Shown one piece after another: positions 14,236 to 62,314 of a stretch of 64,000 nt of DNA. The DNA lies in contig NC_092371.1 in assembly GCF_030028105.1 (NCBI RefSeq), positions 190,152,031 to 190,216,030 on the forward strand, read 5' to 3'. Every line of letters starts with the position of its first letter. Position 1 is the first letter of the stretch. The notes under the pieces were generated by a model, which saw nothing but the letters and a program-made list of their open reading frames with translations, had not been told where the DNA came from and did not search any database. The DNA is from Mobula birostris (lineage: Eukaryota). The translations under genes and the position numbers were made by a program.

Positions 14236-14730
14236 AGCATGCTAAATTACAGCTATTGCATCAATTCCAATTTTCCAGGGAGGAGTCAATTGCTCATGAA
14301 AGGCCATCAGTGTATAATGTTAACTGGGTTTCTTTCTGCAGAGGTGCTACCTCATCTACTAAGTAGTTCCAGCATGTTTTTGTTTTCACTTTCAAATTTT
14401 CAGTATTTCAGTTTGAGATTAGTTTATTGTCATATACACTAAGTGCAATGCTCACGTGAAACCTTCAGACCAAACAGGAAACATGGCAATAATAAGTACA
14501 ATAAATACACAGACGAGTGCAAAACAAGGGAATGGTGCTAAGTATAATAGTGCAAACTGAGGTCGTGCAAAACAAAATGCTAAAGTAACAGTAACGGAAG
14601 AGGTAGAATTAAAGGTTTGAGGACATTGCAGCACCATTGGGAAGAGGATGCAAGAGAGATGATTGATTACAGAAGTCCGATAGCAGTGGGGAAAAAGCTG
14701 CCCTTGAGCTTGGCTATCCAGGTTTTCAAG

Positions 14731-15169
14731 CAACACACACAAAATGCTGCTGAACGCAGCAGGAGAAATTCAAGCAACACACATAAAAAGTGCTGGTGAA
14801 CGAAACCCTCTCTCACTGCTCCCTATCTATAATTTCTTTGGCCTTCAACGTTTTGACCACATTTTGACTCAGACTCGCTACTACAGCCATATATCCTTCC
14901 CTGGAACGTGTCTCCCTTTTGTCAATCAACTTTCCAGCTCTCAGTTCCATCCCTCCCCCTCCGGTCTTCTCCTATCATTTTGGATCTCCCCCTCCCCCTC
15001 CCACTTTCAAATCTCTTGCTATCTCTTCTTTCAGTTAGTCCTGACGAAGGGTCTCAGCCCGAAATGTCGGCTGTACCTCTTCCTATAGATGCTGCCCGGC
15101 CTGCTGCGTTCACCAGCATTTTTTATGTGTGTTGCTTGAATTTCCAGCATCTGCAGATTTCCTCATGTT
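14731..15169. mobile_element. Short composite inverted Penelope-like insertion (#1)
   Basis: 12-bp TSD CAGGTTTTCAAG (14719-14730 and 15170-15181); two short minus-strand terminus copies, a putative ORF N-terminal piece, then a + strand 3'UTR with hammerhead. Confidence 0.85.
15037..15072 (+). ncRNA. Minimal type I hammerhead ribozyme motif
   Basis: agtc-CTGACGA-a-gggt-ctca-gccc-GAAA-t-GTC-ggct. Confidence 0.7.
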
Positions 15170-16097
15170 CAGGTTTTCAAGTTCCTGTATCCTCTCCAAA
15201 TGAGTGGAAATGGAATGGCTTGGGTAGCAGGCATCCTTGACAATACAGTTAGACTTCCTGGAACTAAACTGAAAAATTAGTTTTGTACTTCTTGCATAAA
15301 GGAATCAGTCAAAAACAATTATTCTTAAAATAAATCTGTCATTCTAAGTTTATCAGCATGAAAACATTCAGCCTATCGTGATCTCCAAGCATCATGCATC
15401 ATCACATGGCCAAAAAGGAAATAAATATGCTGTTCTTGGCTGTCTTTGAGTGGCCAATAGTTTGCCTTCTGATTTTCTCCCATCCTATGTAGGGAATAGC
15501 CTTCACTCTTCTCAGTGCCTCAAGTAATAACACAATTGTGATTGGTATCACACAGCGTGTAGTGTTTGTGGTTCTGCAGAAATCAAGATTTTTTTCTTGG
15601 CATGATCCATTGAAAAGGCCATAACTGACACAAAGCTCTTATCTTGAAAACTGAGTTACATACTTGAGCAAGTTCAGTATTTTAAAAGCACATATCGATT
15701 GTTTGAATTCAGAAAGAGTTACCATGAGTATTCTTTAACTGATTATGCACAGTCCTATAATTCTCCACAATGGGAGAGCTTTTCTTGGGCTTGGGTTGTG
15801 ATCATGGGAATGCACATTGTTCTAATTTAAGATTAGGATGCCAAACTAATTAGGAAGTATATGATTAGTAAATTGACTTGTTTGAAGATTCTTTTAAATT
15901 TGACCTTCAGTCTGTTGAAAATACAAAATCTACTGGAATATGCAACAGATATCAATGAGTAATAGGTTAATGGTAAATAAACATCTGATTTTAACTTTGG
16001 TTCTATTTTAAAATAAGTAGGCAATACATTTTAAAAAATCAGTATCAACAGATCTAATACAGCTTAACAAAGGTCTCAATGCAATATCATTTTAAAG

Positions 16098-16101
16098 AAG
16101 C

Positions 16102-16139
<38 letters not shown>

Positions 16140-16206
16140 GCTGGAGGAACTCAGCAGCTATAGAAGTGAATAAACAATCAACATTGTCAGCCGAGACCCT
16201 TCTTCA
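16098..16206 (-). mobile_element. Penelope-like terminal fragment with expanded (AC)n
   Basis: aagcaa(ca)n atgctggaggaactcagcag...gccgagacccttcttca. Confidence 0.7.
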
Positions 16207-17034
16207 TTAGAAAAATATTGTTAATGTACAAACCTCATCAGTGTATAACTATGTTTTATACATATCTTTGGGCAGAACAGTGTAGCCATATAAACATTTG
16301 AAACTAATGCAATTTATCACATTGTATGTAGTTGGTGCTATCGAAACTCAATAATTTAGCTTGATGGGGTCAAACAAAACAAGATTGGAATTAGTTGATT
16401 AATGTAAATCTCTATGTGGCCACTGAAATTAATCGAGAAGTCAGTCCCCACCATCAGAGGAGTTGCCACCCTCTGGGAATACAGGTCATTTGCTTGCCAC
16501 ATGACTGTTTCAAGACAAGTCACCTTGAAACAAAAATAATTTGGTCTCTGGAGCTTTACATAATCATCACAGAATGTTTGTTCAGTAAGTGTTGATTTTT
16601 AAAAAAAATTAAACACCTTCCTGATTTCTAATATGTGCGTTAGTTACCTTTTGCCAATTAAGCAAGGAATAGACAGAAATCTATGAAATGTTCTTGAAGT
16701 GAATAAAGGAAGCACAATGCAAAGCAAAGGCAGAATCACAAAAATACTGTCTAAATACGAAAGGGTCTGACAGCATTTGACAAGTGGTGCAGTAACTTCA
16801 GGCTAGGGACAGATGCATGATTAAGCTCAGATACCCAGGACCACTCTCTGTGGTGTCAATAGACTTAATTGCATTGGAGTTCACCAAGACAAGTTTCAAG
16901 GGTAGAGGAAACCTATAGAGCCTCCCAAACTGAAGGTCATCAAAGCTCTATTAACAGCAGTGGCTGGTACAACAATATATTCAAAGTTATACTCTCTGAT
17001 ACATGCAGTTCTCAAAGGTGCACTCACAGTCATA

Positions 17035-17910
17035 TATTCTAAGATGGTGCCAAGCTCTGACCTCCACTTAGGTTGTGGCACAGTTTTAGTCATTTGTTTA
17101 GTGTTCTTTTCTGTCTCGTAGGGATGGGTTTGGGGACAGATAAGGGAATTAGGGGTCAGGTTAATGTTTAGGGACAGGGATGTGGGGGAATTAGAGGACA
17201 GGCTAGAGTCTAAGTCTCCACACTGCATTTGAAGGCCAGCAACATGGATGTGGAATGTCCACAGGTTAGACCTTGATGTCAGGCTGGATATCAGGCCAGC
17301 AGACCAGCATGGACAAGAGCTGGTGCCCCCCACCCCACCCCCAGGTCAGAAAGTCGTCAGAGGGTTCAGGAGTCTGTGTTCTGTGTGGGTAGGAGGAACG
17401 AGATCTGATGCTCACCCGGATTTGCAAATTGGTGAGACTGGTGTTCAAGGCCTCATGTTCGGGGTCCCATCGTTGATGAGTCTAGAATTCGAGTCCTAGT
17501 GTTTGGTGCTGGGGTTAATGCCAAGGATAGAGACCTGAGGGTCAAATAATTGGAGATCCAGAAGTCAAGGCCCTTTGTCCGGCGAATCTCTGCGTGGTTG
17601 AAGGAACAATATCTGTGAGTCTGAGTCTAATTCCAAGTCTGCTGGAGGGTGGAGGCCATTGAAGGTGGCCTGTCCTGGGGTTAGAGGGCTGTTTATGTGC
17701 ATGGGTGCAAGGGAGGAACGGGACTGTTTTCTGTGGTTTCTTTGTTGTGCTCTCTTTTGTGTGTTTTGTTTTGTTCCGCCGAGCATTGTTGAGATGTTAT
17801 GTTGGCGCCAGGATGTGTGGCAACATGTTTGGGCTGCCCCATCATACCCTCAACTGTACTGGTTGTTAACACAACTGACACATTTCACAGTATGTTTTGA
17901 TGTACTTGAA
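17035..17910 (+). mobile_element. Unclassified interspersed repeat with a Rex1-like 3' end
   Basis: GC-richer block starting aagatggtgcc and ending catttcacagtatgttttgatgtac. Confidence 0.35.
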
Positions 17911-19489: not shown

Positions 19490-19657
19490 NNNNNNNNNNN
19501 NNNNNNNNNNNNNNNNNNNNNNNNNNNNNNNNNNNNNNNNNNNNNNNNNNNNNNNNNNNNNNNNNNNNNNNNNNNNNNNNNNNNNNNNNNNNNNNNNNNN
19601 NNNNNNNNNNNNNNNNNNNNNNNNNNNNNNNNNNNNNNNNNNNNNNNNNNNNNNNNN
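19490..19657. other. Assembly gap
   Basis: Run of 168 N. Confidence 1.
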
Positions 19658-19846
19658 GTGTTTGCAATCTTGTAAAACTCAGAAGTACAGCAGCACAGCT
19701 CCAGGTAAAAAAGGATAAACAGCTTTAAAAGTATTTGTCATATTACCTTAACAACAGGAATTCTGCAGATGCTGGAAATTCAAGCAACACACATAAAAGT
19801 TGCTGCTGAACGCAGCAGGCCAGGCAGCATCTCTAGGAAGAGGTGC

Positions 19847-19882
19847 AGTCGACGTTTCAGACCGAGACCCTTCGTCAGGACT
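19847..19882 (-). ncRNA. Minimal type I hammerhead ribozyme motif
   Basis: Reverse complement agtc-CTGACGA-a-gggt-ctcg-gtct-GAAA-c-GTC-gact; stem II weakened. Confidence 0.7.
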
Positions 19883-20175
19883 AACTGAAGGAAGAGTGAG
19901 TGAGGGATTTGAAAGTTGGAGGGGGAGGGGGAGATCCAAAATGATAGGAGAAGACAGGAGGGGGAGGGATGGAGCCAAGAGCTGGACAGGTGATAGGCAA
20001 AAGGGATACGAGAGGATCATGGGACAGGAGGTCTGGGAAGAAAGTCAAGAGGGGGGACTACCCAGAGGATGGGCAAGGGGTATATTCAGAACTACAGAGG
20101 GAGAAAAAGGAGAGTGAGAGAAAGAATATGTGTATAAAAATAAGTAACAGATGGGGTACGAGGGGGAGGTGGGGC

Positions 20176-21493
20176 ATTAGCGGAAGTTAGAGAAGTCGAT
20201 GTTCATGCCATCAGGTTGGAGGCTACCCAGACGGAATATAAGGTGTTGTTCCTCCAACCTGAGTGTGGCTTCATCTTTACAGTAGAGGAGGCCGTGGATA
20301 GACATGTCAGAATGGGAATGGGATGTGGAATTAAAATGTGTGGCCACTGGGAGATCCTGCTTTCTCTGGCAGACAGAGCGTAGGTGTTCAGCAAAGCGGT
20401 CTCCCAGTCTGCGTTGGGTCTCGCCAATATATAGAAGGCCACATCAGGAGCACCGGACGCAGTATATCTTCCCAGCTGACTCACAGGTGAAGTGTTGCCT
20501 CACCTGGAAGGACTGTTTGGGGCCCTGAATGGTGGTAAGGGAGGAAGTGTAAGGGCATGTGTAGCACTTGTTCCGCTTACACGGATAAGTGCCAGGAGGG
20601 AGATCAGTGGGGAGGGATGGGGGGGACGAATGGACAAAGGAGTTGTGTAGGGAGCGATCCCTGCGGAATGCAGAGGGGGGGGGAGGGAAATATGTGCTTA
20701 GTGTTGGGATCCCGTTGGAGGTGGCGGAAGTTACGGAGAATAATATGTTGGACCCGGAGGCTGGTGGGGTGGTAGGTGAGGACCAGGGGAACCCTATTCC
20801 TAGTGGGGTGGCGGGAGGATGGAGTGAGAGCAGATGTATGTGAAATGGGGGAGATGCGTTTAAGAGCAGAGTTGATAGTGGAGGAAGGGAAGCCCCTTTC
20901 TTTAAAAAAGGAAGACATCTCCCTCGTCCTAGAATGAAAAGCCTCATCCTGAGAGCGGATGCGGCGGAGACGGAGGAATTGTGAAAAGGGGATGGCGTTT
21001 TTGCAAGAGACAGGGTGAGAAGAGGAATAGTCCAGATAGCTGTGAGAGTCAGTAGGCTTATAGTAGACATCAGTGGATAAGCTGTCTCCAGAGACAGAGA
21101 CAGAAAGATCTAGAAAGGGGAGGGAGGTGTCAGAAATGGACCAGGTAAACTTGAGGGCAGGGTGAAAGTTGGAGGCAAAGTTAATGAAGTCAGCGAGCTC
21201 AGCATGCGTGCAGGAAGCAGCGCCAATGTAGTCGTCGATGTAGCGAAGGAAAAGTAGAGGACAGATACCAGAATAGGCACGGAACATAGATTGTTCCACA
21301 AAGCCAACAAAAAGGCAGGCATAGCTAGGACCCATACGGGTGCCCATAGCTACACCTTTAGTTTGGAGGAAGTGGGAGGAGCCAAAGGAGAAATTATTAA
21401 GAGTAAGGACTAATTCCGCTAGACGGAGCAGAGTGGTGGTAGAGGGGAACTGATTAGGTCTGGAATCCAAAAAGAAGCGTAGAGCTTTGAGAC
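20176..21493 (-). pseudogene. 5'-truncated PLE RT + GIY-YIG endonuclease (frameshifted)
   Basis: QTKGVAMGTRMGPSYA, FLRYIDD, LPFLD, YYKPTD; CKRNKCYTC..FTCES linker; IYCVRC; frameshift in a poly-G run near 20680. Confidence 0.9.
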
Positions 21494-23031
21494 AAACCTG
21501 CCTGTCCTGGCCGACCTATTGTCTCAGCTTGCTCCTGCCCCACCGAACTCGTTTCTGCATACCTCGACACGGTTTTATCCCCCCTTGTTCAATCCCTTCC
21601 TACCTATGTTCGTGACACTTCTCACGCTCTTAAACTTTTCGATGATTTTAAGTTCCTTGGCCCCCACCGCTTTATCTTCACCATGGATGTCCAGTCCCTA
21701 TATACTTCCATCCCCCATCAGGAAGGTCTCAAAGCTCTACACTTCTTTTTGGATTCCAGACCTAATCAGTTCCCCTCTACCACCACTCTGCTCCGTCTAG
21801 CGGAATTAGTCCTTACTCTTAATAATTTCTTCTTTGGCTCCTCCTACTTCCTCCAAACTAAAGGTGTAGCTATGGGCACCCGTATGGGTCCTAGCTATGC
21901 CTGCCTTTTTGTTGGCTTTGTGGAACAATCTATGTTCCGTGCCTATTCTGGTATCTGTCCCCCACTTTTCCTTCGCTACATCGACGACTGCATTGGCACT
22001 GCTTCCTGCACGCATGCAGAGCTTGTTGACTTTATTAACTTTGCCTCCAACTTTCACTCTGCCCTCAAGTTTACCTGGTCCATTTCCGACACCTCCCTCC
22101 CCTTTCTAGATCTTTCTGTCTCTGTCTCTGGAGACACTGATGTCTACTATAAGCCTACTGACTCTCACAACTGTCTGGACTATTCCTCTTCTCACCCTGT
22201 CTCTTGCAAAAACACCATCCCCTTTTCGCAATTCCTCCGTCTCCACCGCATCTGCTCTCAGGATGAGGCTTTTCATTCTAGGACGAGGGAGATGTCTTCC
22301 TTTTTTAAAGAAAGGGGTTTCCCTTCCTCCACTATCAACTCTGCTCTTAAACGCATCTCCCCCATTTCACGTACATCTGCTCTCACTCCATCCTCCCGCC
22401 ACCCCACTAGGAATAGGGTTCCCCTGGTCCTCACCTACTACCCCACCAGCCTCCGGGTCCAACATATTATTCTTCGTAACTTCCGCCACCTCCAACAGGA
22501 TCCCACCACTAAGCACCTTTCCCTCCCCCCCCCCCCGCATTCCGCAGGGATCGCTCCCTACGCGACTCCCTTGTCCATTCGTCCCCCCCATCCCTCCCCA
22601 CTGATCTCCCTCCTGGCACGTATCCGTGTAAGCGGAACAAGTGCTACACATGCCCTTACACTTCTTCCCTTACCACCATTCAGGGCCCCAAACAGTCCTT
22701 CCAGGCGAGGCAACACTTCACCTGTGAGTCGGCTGGGAAGATATACTGCGTCCGGTGCTCCCGGTGTGGCCTTTTATATATTGGCGAGACCCGACGCAGA
22801 CTGGGAGACCACTTTGCTGAACACCTACGCTCTGTCTGCCAGAGAAAGCAGGATCTCCCAGTGGCCACACATTTTAATTCCACATCCCATTCCCATTCTG
22901 ACATGTCTATCCACGGCCTCCTCTACTGTAAAGATGAAGCCATACTCAGGTTGGAGGAACAACACCTTATATTCCGTCCAGGTAGCTTCCAACCTGATGG
23001 CATGAACATTGACTTCTCTAACTTCCGCTAA
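21494..23031 (+). pseudogene. 5'-truncated PLE RT + GIY-YIG endonuclease (frameshifted)
   Basis: Frame open from KPACPGRPIVS through MDVQSLYTSIPH, GVAMGTRMGPSYA and FLRYIDDC; frameshift in poly-C near 22530; then 4-Cys linker and IYCVRCSRCGLLYIGET (Neptune-like). Confidence 0.92.
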
Positions 23032-23325
23032 TGCCCCACCTCCCCCTCGTACCCCATCTGTTACTTATTTTTATACACATATTCTTTCTCTCACTCTCCT
23101 TTTTCTCCTTCTGTAGTTCTGAATATACCCCTTGCCCATCCTCTGGGTCATCCCCTCCCTTGACTTTCTTCCCGGACCTCCTGTCCCATGATCCTCTCAT
23201 ATCCCTTTTGCCAATCACCTGTCCAGCTCTTGGCTCCATCCCTCCCCCTCCTGTCTTCTCCTATCATTTTGGATCTCCCCCTCCCCCTCCAACTTTCAAA
23301 TCCCTCACTCACTCTTCCTTCAGTT

Positions 23326-23361
23326 AGTCCTGACGAAGGGTCTCGGCCTGAAATGTCGACT
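23326..23361 (+). ncRNA. Minimal type I hammerhead ribozyme motif
   Basis: agtc-CTGACGA-a-gggt-ctcg-gcct-GAAA-t-GTC-gact. Confidence 0.72.
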
Positions 23362-24859
23362 GCACCTCTTCCTAGAGATGCTGCCTGGCCTGCTGCCTTC
23401 ACCAGCAACTTTTATGTGTGTTGCTTGTCATATTACCTTCTTGGATACTGTTCACCCAGCTGTCACTCTTCAAACATCTAGAATCGACTGAAATTCTCGC
23501 TGTAGCTGCTTTCCAGTGTGTCAGGAACGGGCACTTCAGACTCAATCATTTTCCTTGAGGTTCTATCCCACAACACAAAGCCACGTCAGTTTCTGTGATA
23601 GGAAAAGAAGACAAGTCCTTAAACCTTTCCTTGGCATGTAGGCATTTCTAAGGAATACTGTCTCCCTTTTCACTTCTTCCATTTCTAACCACAATTGATC
23701 TAATCAGAATTCACTCTATTTGGGATGCAGCGTGAAGAAGTCTCCAAGACATGCTGGAGCTTCAGTAGCTCAAGGCTAGTTCAACATTAGTTATTTGCAA
23801 AAATGGCATCACCATTTGAGCTGAAAATTGAAGGTCTGTTTCATTCAGAAAATTCCCAGGAACTGCCATCCATTGGTGGAACGCTATGGCGTCATGCAGG
23901 TAGTCTTATCGTTATTTTTGGGATAACATCACTGAAATACCCTGACTGGATGGCATTGGCCTCAAGAGAGTAATTTGATTTGGTTCCTAAGCCTTTCTAT
24001 TTGTGTGGACTTGGGAGTTCTCTCCTCCACCAACAGTTTGATCATTGAAAATCATCAAATTTCAAAGTACCTATATTATCAAAGTATGTATGCTTTAAAC
24101 AACCTTGGAATTTGTATCCTTACAGTCAGCTATGAAACAAAGAACCCCGGTAGAACTCATTAAAAACAAGAGACCATCCAGACACTCAGTGTGCAAAGAG
24201 AGATTAAAAAACAAATCATAACAAACAAACAATAAGAGCAAACAAGTTTGCCAAAAAAATGTGAATAACAAAGCATTTAGCTGCTTTCTTTGTTTCATTG
24301 ACAACCAACAGGTTATTACTTAAGTAGTGCCATTTTAAACCCTTCATTTAGTTTTAAGCAATTAAGTCAGTGCAAGACAGTCCTCTTAAGAGAAAAAGAG
24401 AGTAATTTGATCTCGAGCTCAATAATGAGAAATGTATGCATGCATAAAATACTGAGAGTAAATCACCGCACTCATCTCCCCAAACTTTCTGAATGTCAGC
24501 TCTTTCTGTTAAATGAAGACCATAAAATAGTGTGAATAAAATCTTTAAGTGAATGCTAAGCAATTAATATCTGGGACTAAAAGTATCAGTCCTACGATTT
24601 AAAGCAAATCATCCTAAATTCAAGCTGTGGGTTCATGCCAAACTACTTTTCTGTGCTTGCTTCATGTATATATGTTTTTTAAACAGAAGAATTTTCTTAA
24701 ATAACCTTTAAATAGTTCAGCATGCTTTATTTTTATTCACCTATTTTAGGTATTTTATTGTATGCAGACTATCTAATAATACTTAAATGAAATTTTAAAA
24801 CAGGCAAAGTAACTGAATGCAGTCTAACCAGTTCACATAATGGATTCAGTTTTTGTGTT

Positions 24860-42307: not shown

Positions 42308-44273
42308 TGGTATTGGGAAATGAACTTGGTCAGGTGTCAGATCTCTCAGTGGAAGAGCATTTTGGAGGTAGTGATCACAACTCTATCTCCTTTACTATAG
42401 CGCTAGAGAGGGTTTGGAACAGAAAATTTGGGAAAACATTTAATTGGGGTAGGGGGAAATATGATGTTATTAGACAGGAACTTGGGAACATAAATTGGAA
42501 GCAGGTGTTCTTGAGGAAATGCATGACAGAAATGTGGCAAATGTTCAGGGAACATTTGCATGACATTCTGCATAGGTAGGTTCCATTCAGACAAGGAAGG
42601 GATGATAGGGTAAAAGAACCATGGTGTACAAACTATGTAGAAAATCTAGTTGAGAAGAAAAGAAAAGCTTATAAAAAGGTTCAAGAAACTAGGTACTGTT
42701 AGAGCTCTAGAAAATTGCAAGGGTGTCAGGAAGGAGCTCAAGAATGAAATTCGGAGAGTTAGAAGGGGCTATGAAAAAAGCTTGGCGAGCAGGATTAAGG
42801 AAAACCCCTTGGCATTCTACAAGTATGTGAAGAGCAAGAGGATGAGCCGTGTGATAATAGGACCAATCAGGATTGAGAGTATAAACATGTGCGTGAAGCT
42901 GGAGGAGGTAGTGGAGGTACTAAATGAATACTTTGCTTCATTATTCACCAGTGAAAAGGACCCTGGCAATTGTGGGGATGACTTACAGTGGACTGAAACA
43001 TTTGAGTGTAAAGACATTAAGAAAGAGGATGTGCTGGAGTTTTTGAAAGGTATTAAGTTAGATAAGTCACATGGACCGGATGAGATATACCCCAGGCTAC
43101 TGTGGGAAGTGAGGGAGGAGATTGCTGAGCCTCTGGTGATGATCTTTGCATCATCAATAGGGATGGGAGAAGTACAAGAGGATTGGAAGGTTGCAAACGT
43201 TGTTCCCTTGTTCAAGAAAGGGAGTAGAGATAACCAGGAAATTATAGACCAGTGAGTCTTACTTCAGCGGTGGGCAAATTGTTGGAGAAGATCCTGAAAG
43301 GCAGGGTTTATGAGCATTTGGAGAGACAGAATCTGATTAGGCATAGTCAGCATGGCTTTGTCAAGGGCAGGTCGTGCCTTGGAACCTGATTGAATTATTT
43401 GAGGAAGTAACAAAGCACATTGATGAAGGTAGAGCAGTGGATGTAGTGTATATAGATTTCAGTAAGGAATTTGATAAGGTTCCCCATGTGGGGCTCATTC
43501 AGAAAGTAATGAGGCATGGGATCCAAGGAGACCTTGCTTTATGGATCTGGAATTGGCTTGCCCATAGAAGGCAGAGGGTAGATGGTTCGTATTCTGCATG
43601 GAGGACGGTGACCAGTGGTGTGCCTCAGGGATCTGTGCTGGGGCCCCCTCCTCTTTGTGATTTTTATAAATGACTTGGATGAGGAAGTAGAAGGTTGGGT
43701 TAGTAAGTTTGCTGATGATACAAAAGTTGGGGGTGTCATGGGTACTCTAGATGGGTGTGAGAGGTTACAGCAGGACATCGATAGGATGCAGAACTGGGCT
43801 GAGAGGTGGCAGATGGAGTTCAACCCACGTAAGTGTGAAGTGGTTCATTTCAGTAGGCCAAATTTGAAGACAGAATATAAAATAAATGATAAGTCTCTTG
43901 GCAGTGTGGAGGTTCAGTGAGATCTTGGGGTCTGTGTCCATAGGACACTCAAAGCTGTTGCACAGGTTGACAGTGTTGTTAAGAAGGCGTTTGGTGTGTT
44001 GGCCTTCATCAACCGTGGGACTGATTTCAAGAGCCATGAGGTAATGTTACAGCTATATAAGATGTTAGTTAGACTCCACTTGGAGTACTGTGTTCAGTTC
44101 TGGTCACCTCACTACAGGAAGGATGCAAATGCTATAGAGAGAGTGCAGAGGAGATTTACAAGGATATTTAAATGCAAACAACAGGAATTCTGCAGATGCT
44201 GGAAATTCAAGCAACACACATCAAAGTTGCTGGTGAACGCAGCAGGCCAAGCAGCATCTGTAGGAAGAGGTGC

Positions 44274-44309
44274 AGTCGGCGTTTCAGGCCGAGACCCTTC
44301 GTCAGGACT
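44274..44309 (-). ncRNA. Hammerhead motif with mutated cleavage triplet (GCC)
   Basis: Reverse complement agtc-CTGACGA-a-gggt-ctcg-gcct-GAAA-c-GCC-gact. Confidence 0.6.
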
Positions 44310-44603
44310 AACTGAAGGAAGAGTGAGTAAGGGATTTGAAAGTTGGAGAGGGAGGGGGAGATCCAAAATGATAGGAGAAGACAGGAGGGGGAGGGATAGA
44401 GCCAAGAGCTGGACAAGTGATAGGCAAAAGGGGATACGAGAGGATCATGGGACAGGAGGTCCGGGAAGAAAGACAAGGGGGGGGGGACCCAGAGGATGGG
44501 CAAGAGGTATATTCAGAGGGACAGAGGGAGAAAAAGGAGAGTGAGAGAAAGAATGTGTGCATAAAAATGAGTAACATATGGGGTACGAGGGGGAGGTGGA
44601 GTC

Positions 44604-45919
44604 TTAGCGGAAGTTAGAGAAGTCGATGTTCATGCCATCAGGTTGGAGGCTACCCAGACGGAATATAAGGTGTTGTTCCTCCAACCTGAGTGTGGCTTCA
44701 TCTTTACAGTAGAGGAGGCCGTGGATAAACATGTCAGAATGGGAATGGGATGTGGAATTAAAATATGTGGCCACTGGGAGATCCTGCTTTCTCTGGCGGA
44801 CAGAGCGTAGATGTTCAGCAAAGCGGTCTCCCAGTCTGCGTCGGGTCTCGCCAATATATAAAAGGCCACATCGGGAGCACCGGACGCAGTATATCACCCC
44901 AGTCGACTCACAGGTGAAGTGTTGCCTCACCTGGAAGGGCTGTTTGGGGCCCTGAATGGTGGTAAGGGAGGAAGTGTAAGGGCATATGTAGCACTTGTTC
45001 CGCTTACACGGATAAGTGCCAGGAGGGAGATCAGTGGGGAGGGATGGGGGGGACGAATGGACAAGGGAATTGTGTAGGGAGCGATCCCTGCGGAATGCAG
45101 AGAGATGGGGGGAGGGAAAGACGTGCTTAGTGGTGGGATCCCATTGGAGGTGGCGGAAGTTACAGAGAATAATATGTTGGACCCGGAGGCTGGTGGGGTG
45201 GTAGGTGAGGACCAGGGGAACCCTATTCCTAGTGGGGTGCGGGAGGATGGAGTGAGAGCAGATGTACGTGAAATGGGGGAGATGCGTTTAAGGGCAGAGT
45301 TGATAGTGGAGGAAGGGAAGCCCCTTTCTTTAAAAAAGGAAGACATCTCCCTCATCCTAGAATGAAAAGCCTCATCCTGAGAGCAGATGCGGTGGAGACG
45401 GAGGAATTGCGAGAAGGGGATGGCGTTTTTGCAAGAGACAAGGTGAGAAGAGGAATAGTCCAGATAGTTGTGAGAGTCAGTAGGCTTATAGTAGACATCA
45501 GTGGATAAGCTGTCTCCAGAGACAGAGACAGAAAGATCTAGAAAGGGGAGGGAGGTGTCGGAAATGGACCAGGTAAACTTGAGGGCAGGGTGAAAGTTGG
45601 AGGCAAAGTTAATAAAGTCAACGAGTTCTGCATGCGTGCAGGAAGCAGCGCCAATGCAGTCATCGATGTAGCGAAGGAAAAGTAGGGGACAGATACCAGA
45701 ATAGGCACGGAACATAGATTGTTCCACAAACCCAACAAAAAGGCAGGCATAGCTAGGACCCATACAGGTGCCCATAGCTACACCTTTAGTTTGGAGGAAG
45801 TGGGAGGAGCCAAAGGAGAAATTATTAAGAGTAAGGACTAATTCCGCTAGACGGAGTAGAGTGGTAGTAGAGGGGAACTGATTAGGTCTGGAATCCAAAA
45901 AGAAGCGTAGAGCTTTGAG
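44604..45919 (-). pseudogene. 5'-truncated PLE RT + GIY-YIG (frameshifted)
   Basis: GVAMGTCMGPSYA, FLRYIDDC; GVIYCVRCSRCGLLYIGETRRRLGDRFAEH...DGMNIDFSNFR*. Confidence 0.9.
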
Positions 45920-46182
45920 CCAGTCCTTATATACTTCCATCCCCCATCAGGAAAGTCCAGTCCTTATATACTTCCATCCCCCATCAGGAAGGTCTCAAAG
46001 CTCTACGCTCCACCCTTGTCTTTCTTCCCGGACCTCCTGTCCCATGATCCTCTCGTATCCCCTTTTGCCTATCACCTGTCCAGCTCTTGGCTCCATCCCT
46101 CCCCCTCCTGTCTTCTCCTATCATTTTGGATCTCCCCCTCCCCCTCCAACTTTCAAATCCCTTACTCACTCTTCCTTCAGTT

Positions 46183-46218
46183 AGTCCTGATGAAGGGTCT
46201 CGGCCTGAAACGTCGACT
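46183..46218 (+). ncRNA. Minimal type I hammerhead ribozyme motif (best-preserved core)
   Basis: agtc-CTGATGA-a-gggt-ctcg-gcct-GAAA-c-GTC-gact; predicted cleavage 3' of C46214. Confidence 0.78.
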
Positions 46219-46929
46219 GCACCTCTTCCTACAGATGCTGCTTGGCCTGCTGTGTTCACCAGCAACTTTGATGTGTGTTGTTTACAAGGATATTGCCTGG
46301 ATGGAGAGCATGCCTTATGAGAACAGGTTGAGTGAACATGGCCTTTTCTCCTTGGAACAATGGAGGATGAGAGGTGACCTGATGGAGGTGTACAAGATGA
46401 TAAGTGGCATTGATCATGTGGATAGCCAGAAGCTTTTCCCCAGGGCTGGAGTGGCTAACACGAGGGAGAATAGTTTTAAGTTGCTTGGAAGTAGGTACAG
46501 AGGGGATGTCAAAGATAAGACTTTCACACAGAAAGTGGTGGGTGTGTGGAATGCACTGCCAGGGACAGTGGTGGAGGCAGATACAATAGGGCCTTTTAAG
46601 AGCCTTTCAGGTAGGTACATGGAGCTTAGAAATATAGTGGGCTATGCGGAAGGGAAATTCTAGGCAGCTTCTAAATTAGATTACATGGTTGGCACAACAT
46701 TGTGGGCTGAATGGCCTGTAATGTGCTGCAGATTTCCTACGTTCCATATTCTTTGTACTGCACTCTGCCATACTGGGCTGAGATTGCTAATGGGGCTACT
46801 TGGTCAGAGCCCACCACTGCAAGCGTGAGCATCGCACGTTGCGCAAAGTTCAAAAAACTATATATTTTTTATCACAATCTCTCGCAGAACCCCGGTAGAC
46901 AAAGCCTGCAAATCCTGTGTTCTTAGATT

Positions 46930-49900: not shown

Positions 49901-50440
49901 ACTTGGAGTACTGTGCTCAGTTCTGGTCACCTCACTACAGGAAGGATGTGTAAACCATAGAAAGGATGTAGAGGAGATTTACAAGGATGTTGCCTGGATT
50001 GGGGAGCATGCCTTATGAAGACAGGCTGAGTGAAGTCGGCCTTTTTAGCTTGGAGCGAAGGAGGATGAGAGGTGACCTGATAGAGGTGTATAAGATGATG
50101 AAAGGCATTGATCATGTGGATGGTCAGAGGCTTTTTCTCAGGGCTGAAATGGCTGCCACAAGAGGACACAGGTTTAAGGTTCTTGGGAGTAGGTACAGAG
50201 GAGATGTCAGGGGTAAGTTTTTTACTCATGTGGTGAGTGCGTGAAATGGGCTGCCGGCAGCGGTGGTGGAGGCGGATACGATAGGGTCTTTTAAGAGACT
50301 TTTGGATAGGTATATGGAGCTTAGAAAAATAGAGGCCTGTGGGTAACCCTAGTAATTTCTAAGGTAGGAACATGTTCGGCACAACTTTGTGGGCTGAAGG
50401 GCCTGTATTGTGCTGTGGGTTTTCTATTCTATGTTTCTAT
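46930..50440 (+). mobile_element. Relatively young CR1 LINE (ORF1 SGNH C-terminus, near-complete disrupted ORF2, 3' tail)
   Basis: IGNSIVRG, VHIGTND, DGLHL; 447-aa EN/linker ORF at 47809-49152; YMDFSKAFDKVPH; tail ttctattctatgtttctat. Confidence 0.93.
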
Positions 50441-51958: not shown

Positions 51959-51959
51959 T

Positions 51960-52253
51960 CACCTTCCCGGTGCCTCTCCACCTCCCATTTCTCCCTTGAT
52001 CCACTCTCCTCTCCGATCAGATTCCTGCTTCTCTTGCCGTTAACTTTTTCCATTGATCACCTCCCAGCTTCTTAATCGCCCACCTGGCTTCACCTATCAC
52101 ATTCCAGTTTGTCCTCATTCCCCACTCCCCCCGCCCCCCCCAACCACCTTCTTCTGATATCTTCCCCCCCCCCACTTCCTTTCCAGTCTTGATGAAGGGT
52201 CTCGGCCCAAAACATCAACTGTTTATTCATTTCCATACATAGATGCTGCCTGG
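51960..52253 (+). mobile_element. Penelope-like 3'UTR with degenerate hammerhead, truncated by the gap
   Basis: cagtc-TTGATGA-agggtctcggccc-AAAAC-atcaactg...agatgctgcctgg. Confidence 0.75.
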
Positions 52254-52418
52254 NNNNNNNNNNNNNNNNNNNNNNNNNNNNNNNNNNNNNNNNNNNNNNN
52301 NNNNNNNNNNNNNNNNNNNNNNNNNNNNNNNNNNNNNNNNNNNNNNNNNNNNNNNNNNNNNNNNNNNNNNNNNNNNNNNNNNNNNNNNNNNNNNNNNNNN
52401 NNNNNNNNNNNNNNNNNT
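52254..52418. other. Assembly gap
   Basis: Run of 165 N. Confidence 1.
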
Positions 52419-52764: not shown

Positions 52765-52768
<4 letters not shown>

Positions 52769-53169: not shown

Positions 53170-53494
53170 GGTTACATGGTAGCGCGCGGCGACGGCGCCT
53201 CTTCATCTCGTCCCGGCCTGAAATGGAAAGAGGTGCTGCAGGGGAGTTCTCTGCCTGCACTCAGCTCTACCGTATTCATGTCTGCACGCACTGCCTATGC
53301 TCACTGCTGCCCGATCACTTTGTACTAAATTAGTACAAAAATTATTCTAATCTTTTATTTCGTTTAAAGTTTCTTATTGCTATTCAGCTACTTTTCTTAA
53401 ATAAGATTTTGAAAACATAGACTGAACGCCGGAGTTAGAAAGTCAAAGTGAAGGAGGAAGGTCTGCTCAGAAGAATTCCCCCCTGAGGTAAACG
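53170..53494 (+). other. Probable non-coding first exon of an unidentified host gene (start approximate)
   Basis: Strong donor ACG|GTGAGT at 53494/53495 inside the CpG-rich region; alternative GAG|GTAAAC 7 nt upstream. Confidence 0.5.
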
Positions 53495-57384: not shown

Positions 57385-57497
57385 TTGTCTTGATCAAGGG
57401 TCTTTGATTTTCTTTCTTTCCAGAGATGCAGCATAACCAGTTGAGCGTTTCCAACATCTCTGCTTGTATTTCACTCTTGTAGCATCTGCAGTTTTAA
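57385..57497 (+). mobile_element. Old Penelope-like terminal fragment
   Basis: tgatcaagggtct...cagagatgcagc...tagcatctgcagtttt. Confidence 0.55.
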
Positions 57498-59059
57498 ATA
57501 TTCATTCCCCAGTCTTTTTGGAGGTGATTCCTCTTTTGACACGATAATTTATTGTAGTTTTACTTCTGTATTTTGCCTCACTGTCACAATAAGTCACAAA
57601 ACCTAATGATTTAAAAATAATTGGCTTGCTGTGGGAATGGCATTTAAAATATCTTGTCATTATCTGGAATTATGGTGGCCTAATAGGCTGAGCTTTGAAA
57701 CAAATTTTTATTTCAGATTTGGGAGGCACACAAAATAATGCATGTTACTCATGTGACCACGTGTAACTCTTTCTATATGCAAGTGAAATAACAAGAGGCA
57801 GCTGCACTATCTAGAAATGCAGAATAATTGATTAGCTAGAAACTTGCAACAATCAGTACTTTGTTAAAAGCCAATTAAAATGTATAGCAGCTTCAATTTT
57901 AAAATTTGTACTTGTATTCAGCTTGCTTTCATGGCATAATGTTAGTAACCGTATTGTAATAGAAACTACCAAATTCTAACAAATATAAAGATAACTGCGT
58001 AACAGGTTTACAACCTTGCTAGCTGGTGTTACTCTATGTGGACTTGGGAAATTCAGACATTGCTAATATATCCTAACAGTGTTGAAGTTATAATTTTAAA
58101 AAAATTGGAGATGAACAGCTTATAATCTGAGGTGGTGTTGCATCAGTAGTTTTGGTATGACTTGGAGTAGCTAAGTGGTGTGTAACAGAAATGTAGAAGT
58201 GCCCCAAAGATGGCATATACTTAGATCTCTGATCTTCAACCCTCATTGGCTGAGATTGGTCTGTCACTCAAGCAACAACAGCAGGACCAGTTACTAGTTG
58301 CTATTTGGAGAAGTTTTCAAATCTGGTGATAGAGATGCTTAAAAATACACAGCCACATACTTTGCCTTTGAGGGTTTTATTTGTGACATTATTGTGCTGG
58401 AGGGAAAGAATGATTAGTCATTTATGTTTGGTCACTGGGCATTGGGATGCAAATTTTGCAATTTAATTTTAATACTTGAGTCAGTATTTTGCTCAATATT
58501 TTTGGTTTCTGGTTATCTTGTACCCAGTTAGTGTCAGACACATTTTAATTCTCTTGAAGCATCAAAATAGCTGTAAAATATTTAATTATGTGACTAGATG
58601 TTCGTCTATTCTTGTGACAAATATGTCAGCAACTGTAACTAGAAACATTTGGAACATTCCAAGTGGAGATTTTTTCAAAATATTAAGTAACAATACTTGT
58701 TTTCACAAAATGTCTATTTAATATTTCCAGTTAGTTGGTGTGATTTATTTTTGTTTTAGGTTGATGGACTGTCTGTGCCATCTCATTTCAATCCATAGTG
58801 ATGTTCTCTAATATTTGCGTTGCTACTATATCCACAAGCCTGTATCTATATGGAGGATATTGTCTTTTGCTTGGGTTGTATTTTTAGTTGGATTACATGT
58901 TTGCACAGGTTTCCCTTGAGTGAAGTGAATTCTCCACAGGCTGGCTCGTCAGTACTTTATCTGTTGTTCTGCTCCACTTGGTGCTACGTATAACATTTAA
59001 ATGGAAGCTTTCAATCTCATCTATTATCTAGGTCCCTTTCCCTGCTTGGGTGCTGGTAG

Positions 59060-59392
59060 TGTGAGGGTGTGGGCTGAAGCTACCATGCATCCAAATTACC
59101 TGGATTGCAATGCCAGGGTCTCCTGGGTTCAATTCCAATTTGCAGTTTGTAAGTTCTTTCCATAGCCAAGCAATTTCTAGCTCCTAGTTTTCTTCCTCAT
59201 TCCATTGATGAGGTAGGTTAATTGGCTAATGTAAGTTATCCCTTAATGTAGGTAACTGCAAAAGAATCAAAGGGGAAGGGCATGTATGAGAGAAAAAAGG
59301 AACAAGGCAAAAGGGAAATAAGATGAAATGGCATTGATGCTGAGAGCTGGCACACACCTGATGGGCTGAATATCCTCCTGCGTCATAGAAAA
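59060..59392 (+). mobile_element. tRNA-derived SINE (HE1-like) with CR1-type tail
   Basis: cctgggttcaattcc B-box; gtaggttaattggctaatgtaagtt core; gatgggctgaatatcctcct tail. Confidence 0.65.
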
Positions 59393-59519
59393 TGCAAGTA
59401 AAATCCATGGCAGCTGTTGAATTTAAAATTAGATTGCTATCTAGGGTTTGGATAGGCTTGGTAGGGATGACTTGAGACTGTTGTTTTGTTGTTAGAAGCC
59501 CAATTGTTCCTATTGCTCT

Positions 59520-61435
59520 TTAGGAGAAAGAAACTACCTGCTGTGTCTCATCAATGCCTTCTGACTTAACCAAAAATCAGACCTATACTCAAAACAACAA
59601 AAGTATGACTGGATAGATGTGGCATAAACCTAGGCACCAAAATGGTACGTTGCAAAATCATGCTCATCCTGGTTCCTTACAACTGCCCCCCCCTTACAAA
59701 CACCCAGGGAGTGGCCTCCAAATGGGATAGTTGTCTTCACACTGATGATATTCTCCATTTTTTGTGGCACTCCTACCTGAAATAGTCCTAAAACTGAGCA
59801 CCCACAATGTTCTATGGGTTATTATTAGCAGCAACATTGTAGAATTTTCACAATCACAATCTGCTTGCTCTCAAGTATGCTGAACAAGTAAAACAGCATG
59901 TTAGAAATTATCAAGTGAGCCACCAGCCAACAGAATAAGATCAAGCTGTACAGTACTGCCACATTACATCGTGAATGGATGTGGTTAATTAAACAGTAGA
60001 CAGGAAGAAGAGATTCTAAAAATGTCCCCATGCACTTTCTTGTGCGGCTACTCAGCTTAAGTTCCAGTTTGAGTGTCAAAACTGAGACTGAAGTACTTGT
60101 AAGCATGTTCAACCAAAAGTTATGGATGATTCACGTGGATTTCCTCTTGAGGTTCCCACATTTCAGAAGCCAGTCCAGTCATTTCAGTTCATTCCATGTG
60201 ATCAGAAAGCTGCTGAGTAGATTGAACATTACAAATTCAATAATTACTGAAGGTTAGATTTTTCCCCTCAATGATTTTGCAAAATGATGGAAAGTGTCAT
60301 TAGAGTTTTGAACAGGATTCAATTGCAAATAATCTGCTTGTGATATTCAATCTAGGTTTGCCAGCGCCATTCTGCCTCAACCACAGGCCAATGTGGACTA
60401 AGTAACTCAATTCAGAGGTGAAATAAGAATGATTGTCCTTGATGTCAAGGCAACTTTTAATGGAGTGTGGGATCAATAAGCCCTGATAAAACAGAGGTTA
60501 ATAGGCATCAAGGAGAAGACATTCCAATATCTGGAGTTGTACTTTCCACAAAGAAATGCAGTTGAGGTTAATGGAGGCCAATTGTCCCAACCCCGAGCAT
60601 TATAGTAGTAATCTATGGGACAATGTCCTGGGCTTGAACATCAGCTGCTTTATCGATGCCCTTTCTTTCATCATAAGATCAGATATGTGATTTGCAATCT
60701 TGCAAAATCGTCACTTCTGTTTGCAACCAAAAAAGAATGAAGCAAAGTCTAGATATAATTTGCAAAGCGGTGAGTAGCATTCATGCCATAAAAGCATTAG
60801 ACAGTAACTGTCTCCAGCAACAGAGGATTTAACAGGTTGTTCTTGATGTTCAATGGTATTACCAGTGCTCATCCCACCATCAGCTTACTGAGGATCAGAA
60901 AAACCTAACTGGATTGTTCACGTAAGGCAAGTAAAGCAGGCCAGAGGCTGGATATCCTATGACAAATGACTCTCTTCCATGATTAACAGGCACAAGTCAG
61001 GAAGGTGATGGAATATTCTCCATTTACCTGGATGAGCACAGTTTCAACAACCCTCACGAAGATCAACAGCACCCAAGGTGACAAAGCAACTGAGTTAACT
61101 GACCAGCCAGCACTTGTTCCTTCAGCAGCATGCACCATGATTGTAGTGCAAGTTTGCTCCTCACAAACTTGTGTTCACTACCAGTAGGATGGACAAGGAA
61201 TCATGAAAGCTCCACCACCTGCGGATTGCCCTTTAGTTTCTGCAGCACTCTGACTTGAAATTGTATCCCAATGCCTTGGTGTGTTTAAATCCTAGAATTG
61301 ACTCCACAACACCATGGTGCAACTGCCTTTGGAAGACCTACTACAGTTCAAGTAATGACTTAAAGTTTCTCAAAGGCAATCAGAGATGGGCAATTGATAG
61401 TTAACTAGCCAGCTATGCTTGTTGCCTGAAAAAAA
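59520..61435 (+). mobile_element. Ancient CR1-clade LINE remnant
   Basis: VLDVKATFNGVWDQ (LDxxxAFDxVWH-like) near 60435; degenerate throughout. Confidence 0.55.
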
Positions 61436-61928
61436 TAACTAAAAATGTAGAGGGGGATTCCCTTTGACTATGAGGTAATTTTAAATATGAGTACACGATG
61501 AACAGTAAAAGGTGGGAATGTCAAGATGTTTGTTGAAAAAGAACAAGATTATTTGTGCAGTGCACAGTGACAAGGTGAATAGTTTCAAGGGCAGAAACTT
61601 TAACACTTTTTAATTGGGGAATTTTGGGAGCAGGGATGAAGCTGGAATTAGCATAGACAGTTTAGCTAGAATTGGGATAGTTACATCAGTAGTAAATGTC
61701 AATATACCTTTGGACATGATACCAGCTCTTTAATAGTCAGAGTTCTTATGGCCCGTTGGGTTTGTGCCAGCTGTTTGTGGAGCAGTTCCGCAGGTCCATT
61801 TTCTTTGCTTTGCTTTGCTTCCCTGTGTACCTGCAAAATTTGCTACTGCCTGTCCAATTCACTTTTTAAAGCTCTGTTTGTTTCCAGCATTGAATTCAAA
61901 GTTCCAGATGAGAGCTGTTCTATGCTTT

Positions 61929-62145
61929 GCAACACACACAAAATGCTGGAAGCATTCAGCAGGTCAGGCAGCATCTGTGGAAAGGAGAAAGCAGTCAACG
62001 TTTCAGGCTGAGACCCTTCTTCAGTCCTAAATAAGGGTCTTGTTTACTCTTGTTCCATAGATGCTGCCTGACCTGCTGAGTTCTTCCAGCATTTTGTGTG
62101 TGTTGCTTTGGATTTCCAGCATCTGCAGATTTTCTTGTGTTCGTA
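61929..62145. mobile_element. Miniature inverted Penelope-like insertion (#4)
   Basis: Two inverted terminal pieces; 11-bp TSD TTCTATGCTTT (61918-61928 and 62146-62156). Confidence 0.85.
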
Positions 62146-62314
62146 TTCTATGCTTTTCTTTAATACACAACCTTCCCTCGCACCCATTTATCTATTTGGC
62201 AAGTCCTGTGGACTTCAGATCAACTACTAATAGAAGCAGCTTTTCACCATCTTTCATATTAAAATAGTTACTGTATATCTGTCAATCTTATTTGCAATGA
62301 GGAGAACAACCTCT

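What the first reader, a model, noticed from the sequence alone, without database searches (positions are those of the whole stretch)
14719..62156. Four Penelope-like insertions share one architecture: head-to-head arms, a single TSD, and one long plus one short terminus
Seen: insertions at 14731-15169, 19750-23424, 44169-46280 and 61929-62145 have TSDs of 12, 15, 14 and 11 bp, and the element's 3' end points outward at both edges. In all four, one edge stops at ...TGTGTGTTG(C) and the other runs ~35-50 nt further through ...TTTCCAGCATCTGCAGA.TT.... The long end is right in #1 and #4 and left in #2 and #3. At the short end the TSD overlaps element sequence by 6 nt (#1, TTCAAG) and 3 nt (#2, TTG); #3 and #4 show little or none. 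Established: inverted termini are known for Drosophila virilis Penelope, and L1 twin priming gives 5' inversions with only one 3' end. Inference: both nicked target strands prime reverse transcription at two distinct preferred sites ~40 nt apart downstream of the hammerhead, and the two cDNAs join internally. This would be a rule-like double-TPRT pathway. I do not know it as described for chondrichthyan Neptune elements.
Basis: partly seen in the sequence, partly recalled or inferred. Interest (0 to 1): 0.82.

Follow-up and report, generated by a model that had tools for sequence, protein, structure and literature searches.

The report
Known Penelope-like insertion pattern, rediscovered
Four jumping-gene insertions in this ray-like genome really do have two outward-pointing tails of unequal length and one target duplication, but this is the standard, already published signature of Penelope-like retroelements.

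Summary
All four insertions sit at the stated coordinates. Each has two 5'-truncated arms head to head, with the 3' ends pointing outward. The flanking duplications are exact: 12, 15, 14 and 11 bp. Only 1 of 1174 random position pairs reaches 10 bp or more.

One end of each insertion stops 0-1 nt after GTGTTG. The other runs 35, 35, 43 or 40 nt further. No insertion contains N.

The TSD of #3 is single-copy in a paralogous copy of its host repeat inside the window. It is also single-copy in contigs of three organisms.

The ORFs carry GIY-YIG and the Neptune/Nematis CX4CxxC linker.

The architecture is already in print:
- Arkhipova 2013 and Craig 2021 describe an inverted 5'-truncated copy with a 30-40 bp tail, often at only one end of the insertion.
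- Frangieh 2024 showed in vitro, for Poseidon, that both target strands are nicked and extended from two internal RT start sites that bound the tail.

First readers noted the same pattern in at least eight other pieces of this genome; those notes are unchecked.

One thing stays unexplained: the tail-bearing arms of #2 and #3 break within 2 nt of each other.

The parts
14719..14730 (.). #1 left TSD copy (12 bp). Its last 6 nt, TTCAAG, also match the element sequence just past the short end.
14731..14763 (-). #1 outer inverted piece, 33 nt, ending at the short site (GTGTTG).
   Evidence: 31 of 35 columns identical to the right arm
14764..14802 (-). #1 inner inverted piece, 39 nt. Its 3' end lies 11 nt past the short site, an intermediate end.
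   Evidence: 37 of 38 identical to the right arm
14803..15169 (+). #1 right arm. Homology to #2 runs from 14910. 14803-14909 has no match elsewhere in the window. The tail is 15135-15169 (35 nt).
15170..15181 (.). #1 right TSD copy
19735..19749 (.). #2 left TSD copy (15 bp)
19750..21493 (-). #2 left arm, 1744 nt, 5'-truncated within the RT. It carries the tail (19750-19784, 35 nt), the hammerhead-like core (19855-19878) and the CX4CxxC linker (20555-20581).
21494..23424 (+). #2 right arm, 1931 nt, ending at the short site. 21494-21725 is found only in this arm. The arms are 1642 of 1710 columns identical.
23425..23439 (.). #2 right TSD copy. Its first 3 nt, TTG, match the element continuation.
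44155..44168 (.). #3 left TSD copy (14 bp)
44169..45919 (-). #3 left arm, 1751 nt, with the tail (44169-44211, 43 nt). GIY-YIG ORF at 44604-44930, RT ORF at 44927-45940. The inner end lies 2 nt from that of #2's tail-bearing arm.
45920..46009 (+). #3 junction pieces: 45920-45956 (37 nt) and 45957-46009 (53 nt). Both are sense-strand copies of the region just 5' of where the left arm begins.
46010..46280 (+). #3 right arm, the last 271 nt of the element, ending at the short site. It is 264 of 271 identical to the left arm.
46281..46294 (.). #3 right TSD copy
49978..49991 (.). Paralogous empty site for #3. In another copy of the host repeat (49845-50128) the 14-nt target occurs once, with 1 mismatch.
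   Evidence: also joints 44165->46302
61918..61928 (.). #4 left TSD copy (11 bp)
61929..62030 (-). #4 left arm, about 102 nt, ending at the short site. Hammerhead-like core at 62001-62024.
62031..62145 (+). #4 right arm, about 115 nt, with the tail (62106-62145, 40 nt). The arms are 59 of 66 columns identical.
62146..62156 (.). #4 right TSD copy

Best explanation
These are four independent insertions of 5'-truncated Penelope-like retroelements of the Neptune type. They belong to at least two subfamilies and show the canonical PLE insertion architecture.

Shown here:
- Each insertion is one event: a single exact TSD of 11-15 bp flanks the pair of arms.
- The two arms lie head to head with their 3' ends outward.
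- One outer end stops at a fixed proximal position, ...GTGTTG(C). The other stops 35-43 nt further on, which is the PLE 'tail'.
- The inner junctions are irregular.

Inferred:
- The element's GIY-YIG nuclease nicks both target strands 11-15 bp apart.
- Each free 3'-OH primes reverse transcription inside the 3' region of the element RNA rather than at its end. One starts at the proximal site and one at the distal site.
- The two antisense cDNAs grow towards each other, stop or switch template, and are joined and filled in.
- At the proximal site the target end can pair with the RNA just downstream (6 and 3 nt in two of four cases), but this pairing is not required.
For: - Structure, TSDs and end positions.
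- #3 TSD is a true duplication of a single-copy target: in-window paralog. Contigs of three organisms cross the site uninterrupted: 22, 24 and 11 contigs for joint 44165->46302.
- Enzymes: GIY-YIG PF01541 scores 24.3 bits against a cut-off of 22.6. The RT ORFs carry YIDD, and their homologues carry PF00078, PF26215 and PF01541. The CX4CxxC linker is present in 3 of 3 long arms.
- In #2 the 232-nt unique centre belongs to the tail-less arm. The tailed arm therefore cannot be a fold-back copy of the other.
- #1 and #3 have multi-piece junctions, as expected from repeated template switching.
- Literature: the same genomic signature is described for PLEs. Both-strand nicking and extension, and two internal RT start sites bounding the tail, were shown in vitro for Poseidon.
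Against: - No direct evidence in the window for priming on both strands. That step rests on analogy with a different PLE clade, Poseidon.
- Frangieh et al. report no difference in start-site use between strands. This does not by itself predict one long and one short end in every insertion.
- Craig 2021 attributes the tail to endonuclease-mediated resolution of the intermediate, not to start sites.
- Rfam calls no hammerhead here.
- Direct pLTRs, typical of full PLE units, are absent from all four.
- The RVT_1 match is below Pfam's cut-off: 19.2 bits against 29.6.
- Older fragments at 12413-12487 and 16127-16207 show a short end with no visible partner arm.
Confidence: 0.72

Rival explanations
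1. Fold-back route. A single cDNA is primed on one strand, its 3' end snaps back and copies itself to make the second arm. The nuclease then trims the tail from one side when the intermediate is resolved.
For: - Arkhipova 2013 infers self-priming from palindromes at inverted junctions.
- Craig 2021 suggests the tail comes from EN-mediated resolution.
- #4 is nearly symmetric, with an 8-bp inverted repeat (AGACCCTT/AAGGGTCT) around a 14-nt centre.
- The arms of #2 and #3 are 96-97% identical.
- This route would make one long and one short end obligatory.
Against: - In #2 the arm that contains the unique 232-nt centre, which would be the first-made arm, is the one without the tail. The tailed arm would then have to copy a tail its template lacks, unless trimming came later.
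- #1 and #3 have two- and three-piece junctions rather than a simple loop.
- No palindromic microhomology is visible at the #2 or #3 junctions.
- The short end falls within 1 nt in 4 of 4 insertions and shows target microhomology in 2 of 4. That looks like priming, not trimming.
Confidence: 0.15
2. The palindromes are non-autonomous units, pseudo-MITEs or foldback elements, that are copied whole with the inverted structure inherited. Each insertion would not rebuild the structure.
For: - The tail-bearing arms of #2 and #3 end within 2 nt of each other at the inner side.
- First-reader notes elsewhere in this genome mention families of 138-220 bp palindromes (unchecked).
Against: - The partner side of the inner junction differs between #2 and #3: 232 nt against 37 nt further 5'.
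- Total sizes are 439, 3675, 2112 and 217 nt.
- TSD length varies from 11 to 15 bp and the ends are asymmetric, unlike transposase-mobilised TIR elements.
- A three-way comparison of 2L, 2R and 3L is star-like: 22, 33 and 44 private differences in 1695 ungapped columns.
Confidence: 0.06
3. Artefact or coincidence. Either two separate insertions landed side by side, or the assembly folded a repeat into a palindrome next to a gap.
For: - #2 lies 77 nt from an assembly gap.
- Arkhipova 2013 and Craig 2021 note that PLE tandem/inverted structures are hard to assemble.
- In one search no listed contig spans the whole of #3.
Against: - One exact TSD flanks each pair and no internal TSD is present.
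- The arms are 89-97% identical, not 100% as a fold-back artefact would give.
- Four of four insertions share one geometry.
- The #3 target is single-copy in paralogues.
Confidence: 0.04

Closest known systems
Canonical EN+ PLE insertion unit (e.g. Pen2a_Av of Adineta vaga, Arkhipova 2013; Fig. 2 scheme of Craig 2021)
   Same: - An inverted 5'-truncated copy lies at the upstream side.
- One short TSD flanks the whole unit.
- A 30-40 bp tail is present at the 3' end of only one of the inverted repeats.
- A hammerhead-like motif sits in the terminal repeat.
- Heavy 5' truncation (passages seen).
   Different: - No direct pLTR or partial tandem in any of the four here; they are bare head-to-head dimers of truncated copies.
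- TSDs are 11-15 bp, against 8-10 bp reported for A. vaga.
- The host is a cartilaginous fish. My searches found no description of PLE insertion architecture in that group.
Poseidon PAc of Anolis carolinensis, in vitro TPRT (Frangieh et al. 2024)
   Same: - Two internal RT start sites, with the tail being the sequence between them.
- Both target strands are nicked and extended.
- The start site need not be homologous to the target.
- The ribozyme lies upstream of the start sites.
   Different: - Different clade. Poseidon lacks the extra CX2-5CxxC linker.
- In PAc the start sites lie 111-118 nt into the ORF of the next tandem unit. Here the termini are non-coding as far as the window shows.
- In vitro no strand bias of start sites was seen, whereas here 4 of 4 insertions are heterotypic.
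- 2 of 4 short ends here use 3-6 nt of microhomology.
L1 twin priming (Ostertag and Kazazian 2001; recalled, paper not seen)
   Same: The second target strand primes on element RNA and produces an inverted segment within a single TSD. In #3 a 37-nt sense piece ends exactly one base before the coordinate where the inverted arm begins, a twin-priming-like contiguity.
   Different: In L1 the second primer anneals at a random internal site, so there is only one 3' end and the two segments do not overlap. Here both arms start in the 3' terminal region and overlap over up to 1.7 kb.
Drosophila virilis Penelope
   Same: Terminal repeats may be direct or inverted. The tail is reported to be required for EN recognition, as summarised by Frangieh 2024. 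Rearranged copies with long inverted repeats are reported.
   Different: Penelope/Poseidon clade, with an atypical hammerhead. I could not read the primary paper, Pyatkov 2004 (not held).

Membership tests
Penelope-like elements, EN+ | GIY-YIG endonuclease domain C-terminal to the RT | tested here: met
   ORF 44604-44930(-) matches PF01541 at 24.3 bits, above the 22.6 cut-off. It lies directly downstream of RT ORF 44927-45940(-).
Penelope-like elements, EN+ | PLE/TERT-like reverse transcriptase | tested here: inconclusive
   RVT_1 scores only 19.2 bits (E=0.0011), below the 29.6 cut-off, and 13.2 bits. A YIDD motif is present. The search returned 893 homologues at E<=0.001, and of the 120 listed many carry PF00078, PF26215 and PF01541. 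No tree against reference PLE/TERT RTs was made.
Penelope-like elements, EN+ | Hammerhead ribozyme motif in the terminal repeat | tested here: inconclusive
   The core CTGAnGA-N13-GAAA is present in 6 arms of the four insertions and in one other copy. It resembles the min-HHR described by Cervera and de la Pena 2014. Rfam gives 0 hits at gathering threshold and no hammerhead family at E<=10 on 46100-46300. Cleavage was not tested.
Penelope-like elements, EN+ | Pseudo-LTRs from partial tandem (direct) arrangement | tested here: not met
   No direct repeat of the terminal region in #2, #3 or #4. #1 has only two short tandem inverted pieces. Craig 2021 states that pLTRs may be direct or inverted, so the inverted form is met.
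Penelope-like elements, EN+ | 30-40 bp tail extension present at only one end of the insertion | tested here: met
   Long ends are 35, 35, 43 and 40 nt past GTGTTG. Short ends are 0, 1, 0 and 1. Each of the 4 insertions has one of each.
Penelope-like elements, EN+ | Short TSD flanking the whole tandem/inverted unit | tested here: met
   Exact TSDs of 12, 15, 14 and 11 bp. A single-copy target at a paralogous site is shown for #3 only.
Neptune clade | [quoted passage not shown] | tested here: met
   CKRNKCY(T/I)C lies 27-30 aa upstream of the (V/K)IY start of GIY-YIG in arms 2L, 2R and 3L.
Neptune clade | RT groups with reference Neptune RTs in a phylogeny | not tested
   No named Neptune reference sequences were obtainable with these tools. 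Craig 2021 reports Neptune as paraphyletic.
L1-type twin priming product | Only one element 3' end; the inverted and direct segments are contiguous and do not overlap | tested here: not met
   Each of the four insertions has two 3' ends, and the arms overlap by 33 to 1710 nt.
TIR DNA transposon / MITE | Fixed TSD length and symmetric terminal inverted repeats | tested here: not met
   TSDs are 11, 12, 14 and 15 bp. The outer ends differ by 34-43 nt.

The most novel reading that the evidence does not exclude
The two priming events of one integration may be coupled. One target strand would always use the distal start site and the other the proximal one. This could happen because both cDNAs are made within one asymmetric two-protomer RNP, or on one RNA whose tail is already occupied. 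The first cDNA would then tend to stop or switch at a preferred point about 1.75 kb from the 3' end.

This would be an obligate-heterotypic rule. It is not reported in the in vitro work, which saw no strand difference. It would explain why the tail is 'often at only one end'.
Probability: 0.3. Interest if true: 0.55.

Novelty: new member of a known kind. Interest (0 to 1): 0.27.

Why it matters
PLE integration is among the least understood retrotransposition pathways. The family is enormously abundant in this genome and its relatives: 340,055, 381,051 and 19,742 contigs of three organisms laid on one 2.4-kb copy. That abundance would make the genome a very large natural sample of integration products.

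A census of paired ends could decide between two possibilities. Either the two start sites found in vitro in Poseidon are used independently, or they are used in a coupled way. The in vitro study did not address this.

The four insertions themselves add no new kind of biology. They re-derive a published architecture and a published mechanism.

Tried and rejected
- **Genome-wide end histogram from public runs.** The single read-laying run laid several hundred thousand contigs. Its loose-end table shows only the best-supported rows; 6322 rows were not shown. The shown rows are dominated by the borders of the conserved hammerhead-like core (46183, 46219). The element ends at 44169, 44212 and 46280 were not listed, so I got no histogram of ends. 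The raw-read run X21 (organism E) laid only 4 reads of 10,085,944 records.
- **Metagenome scans** with two terminal motifs returned 0 stretches each.
- **Viral-contig scan** gave one hit, L001. Reading it shows a chance match in unrelated coding-like sequence, so I discarded it.
- **Rfam.** No hammerhead called.
- **RNA structure of the terminus.** RNAalifold pairs AGATGCTG with the tail's CAGCATCT in 6 sequences. The pairs are almost invariant (covariation term +0.14), and the single-sequence fold has a z-score of only -1.16. I treat this as a lead only.
- **Three-way comparison of arms 2L, 2R and 3L** is star-like. It cannot tell whether the arms of one insertion share a template.
- **Evidence for two different templates within one insertion.** #1 outer piece is 31/35 identical to the right arm against 37/38 for the inner piece; #4 arms are 59/66 identical. 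The numbers are too small.
- **A fifth head-to-head candidate at 1960-2215** is too decayed to place its ends.
- **Older single fragments** at 12413-12487, 14294-14382, 16127-16207 and 57386-57494 showed no convincing partner arm. Partners as short as the 33 nt seen in #1 would be lost to decay, so I did not count these for or against the rule.
- **Nick-site motif.** I saw no shared motif in the 8 nick sites by eye. In particular there is no consistent ATT, the motif reported for PAc.
- **Literature limits.** Pyatkov 2004 was not held.

Full report
**Observation.** I read the four insertions and their flanks directly.
- A script searching within ±8 nt of the stated edges found exact direct repeats of 12, 15, 14 and 11 nt at 14719-14730/15170-15181, 19735-19749/23425-23439, 44155-44168/46281-46294 and 61918-61928/62146-62156.
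- The same test on 1174 random position pairs at the same spacings gave 10 nt or more once.
- Written in the element's sense, each insertion has one outer end that stops 0-1 nt after GTGTTG. The other runs 35, 35, 43 or 40 nt further, through TTCCAGCATCTGCAGA.
- That 16-mer occurs exactly four times in the window, once per insertion.
- The long end is on the right in #1 and #4 and on the left in #2 and #3.
- At the short end the target shares 6 nt (#1), 3 nt (#2), 0 (#3) and 0 (#4) with the element sequence that would have followed.

**Assembly gaps.** None of the four insertions, TSDs included, contains N. Gap 19490-19657 ends 77 nt left of #2's left TSD. Gap 52254-52417 cuts a fifth, unrelated PLE arm at 52185-52253, whose end cannot be scored. 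I could not test continuity across the gaps and did not try to fill them.

**Anatomy.**
- #2 is a near-palindrome. Its left arm (19750-21493, minus strand) has the tail. Its right arm (21494-23424, plus strand) has none. The arms are 1642 of 1710 columns identical. The 232 nt at 21494-21725 are unique to the tail-less arm.
- #3 has a 1751-nt tailed left arm. Two short sense pieces follow (45920-45956 and 45957-46009), then the last 271 nt of the element.
- #1 has a roughly 367-nt tailed right arm preceded by two tandem inverted pieces of 33 and 39 nt. The inner piece ends 11 nt beyond the short site.
- #4 is a 217-nt mini-palindrome of a more divergent subfamily. It is 77-84% identical to #2 and its arms are 59 of 66 columns identical.

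**What the element is.**
- The arms encode an RT fragment with YIDD. RVT_1 scores only 19.2 bits, below the cut-off.
- They also encode a GIY-YIG domain: PF01541, 24.3 bits against a cut-off of 22.6.
- A CX4CxxC motif lies 27-30 aa upstream of GIY-YIG in all three long arms. This is the linker that Craig 2021 gives as the mark of Neptune and Nematis.
- A core CTGAnGA-N13-GAAA lies about 80 nt inside each terminus. It resembles the minimal hammerheads of metazoan PLEs, but Rfam calls nothing.
- The closest named proteins are uncharacterised or chimeric models from Mobula hypostoma (88-94% identity over 48-69% of the query) and Hypanus sabinus (76% over 99%).

**Is each insertion one event?** For #3 the answer is direct.
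- Its flanks belong to another repeat. A second copy of that repeat in the window (49845-50128) carries the 14-nt target once.
- Contigs of three organisms cross the site uninterrupted: joint 44165->46302 in 22, 24 and 11 contigs of X1, X2 and X11. An X11 loose-end consensus reads straight through the single target.
- For #1, #2 and #4 the flanks are unique in the window, so only the exact TSD speaks.

**How representative are the four?** A profile of the termini found 19 hits in the window.
- Nine are in the four insertions.
- Three are noise (E>4).
- Seven are older fragments: 2017-2075, 6731-6767, 12413-12487, 14294-14382, 16127-16207, 52185-52253 and 57386-57494.
- Two of the seven end at the short site with no visible partner (12413-12487, 16127-16207). 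Two have tail-like ends (14294-14382, 57386-57494). One runs into a gap. One candidate fifth dimer (1960-2215) is too decayed.

So 'one long plus one short' holds for 4 of 4 scorable insertions. That has probability 0.0625 under independent 50:50 choice, which is suggestive but not a rule. First-reader notes from at least eight other pieces of this genome report the same asymmetric head-to-head insertions. They are unchecked and I could not read that DNA.

**What is already known.**
- Arkhipova 2013 (passages) describes a typical Penelope insert. [quoted passage not shown]
- Craig 2021 (passages) generalises this to canonical EN+ PLEs including Neptune. [quoted passage not shown]
- Frangieh 2024 (main text) purified Poseidon protein from Anolis. 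It cleaves and extends both target strands. Reverse transcription starts at two adjacent internal sites not homologous to the target. The genomic tail is the sequence between those sites. They saw no difference in start sites between strands.

My searches found no paper describing this architecture in cartilaginous fishes. None of the 12 listed PLE papers uses the term 'twin priming'.

**Mechanism and rivals.**
- I favour priming on both strands with internal joining (confidence about 0.7). In #2 the first-made arm of a fold-back model would be the one lacking the tail. The junctions of #1 and #3 are multi-piece. The short end is fixed to within 1 nt and uses target microhomology in 2 of 4 cases.
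- A fold-back-plus-trimming route (0.15) would make heterotypic ends obligatory, and earlier authors hinted at it.
- Copying of whole palindromic units (0.06) is disfavoured by differing inner junctions, sizes and TSD lengths.
- Artefact or double insertion (0.04) is disfavoured by single exact TSDs and by arms that are 89-97% rather than 100% identical.

**Unexplained.** The tail-bearing arms of #2 and #3 begin 2 nt apart in element coordinates (GTCTCAAAG... against CTCAAAG...). In #3, three more breakpoints lie within 55 nt of that point. One of them is a 37-nt sense piece ending exactly one base before the arm's first base. This points to a preferred stop or switch site, or to a template RNA end there. 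The window holds no other long copy to test it.

**Verdict.** The insertions are new members of a known kind. Residual interest lies in whether the two start sites are used in a coupled way, which a whole-genome census in this very PLE-rich genome could settle.

Noticed in passing
window 21493 and 45919 (inner ends of the tail-bearing arms of #2 and #3); 45920-46009: The two tailed arms are 5'-truncated 2 nt apart in element coordinates. In #3, three further breakpoints lie within 55 nt of that point. One is a 37-nt sense piece that ends one base before the arm's first base. This could be a hot spot for RT stops or template switching, or the 5' end of a template RNA.
   Followed up: partly
window 14731-14802: #1 has two tandem inverted terminal pieces. 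The outer one ends at the short site. The inner one ends 11 nt past it, a third end position between 'short' and 'long'. The outer piece is less like the right arm (31/35) than the inner piece is (37/38).
   Followed up: partly
window 19750-19879(-) and the equivalent termini of #1, #3, #4, 57386-57500 and 14294-14412: The tail's CAGCATCT is complementary to AGATGCTG about 60 nt upstream, and the short site lies in the enclosed loop. RNAalifold predicts this 9-pair stem in 6 sequences, but there is almost no covariation and the single-sequence fold is not unusual (z = -1.16). A CCAGCA motif precedes both the short and the long end by about 15-20 nt.
   Followed up: partly
window 16096-16207: A solo minus-strand PLE 3' fragment whose short end (GTGTGT...GTTGC) has grown into a (CA)n run of about 20 units. 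The PLE terminus seeds a microsatellite. No inverted partner is visible.
   Followed up: no
window 52185-52253, next to gap 52254-52417: A plus-strand PLE 3' arm, with a C-rich UTR from about 51960 and a hammerhead-like core, runs straight into the assembly gap. PLE termini may be what broke the assembly here.
   Followed up: no
window 46183-46219 (loose ends): Far more contigs match only the 37-nt hammerhead-like core than its surroundings. Loose ends at 46183 (before) and 46219 (behind) appear in 702 to 1334 contigs of X1 and X2, with a consensus like the #4 subfamily. The core is therefore shared by many diverged families.
   Followed up: no
window 46235 -> 44174 (table 5c, X1, depth 445): Some contigs join the inside of a plus-strand terminal region directly to an outward tail end. 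This looks like PLE copies inserted into the terminal region of other PLE copies (self-targeting).
   Followed up: no
window 43996-44168, 46281-46663 and 49845-50128; also 12100-12400: The host of #3 is a LINE-like repeat with a long ORF, present in several copies in the window. The small PLE fragments at 12413-12487 and 14294-14382 each lie just downstream of a 3' end of that kind of repeat.
   Followed up: no
run X21 (organism E): Raw reads of organism E laid only 4 reads of about 10.1 million records at 85% likeness or more. Organisms A, B and C laid tens to hundreds of thousands of contigs. The family is lineage-restricted among the species sampled.
   Followed up: no
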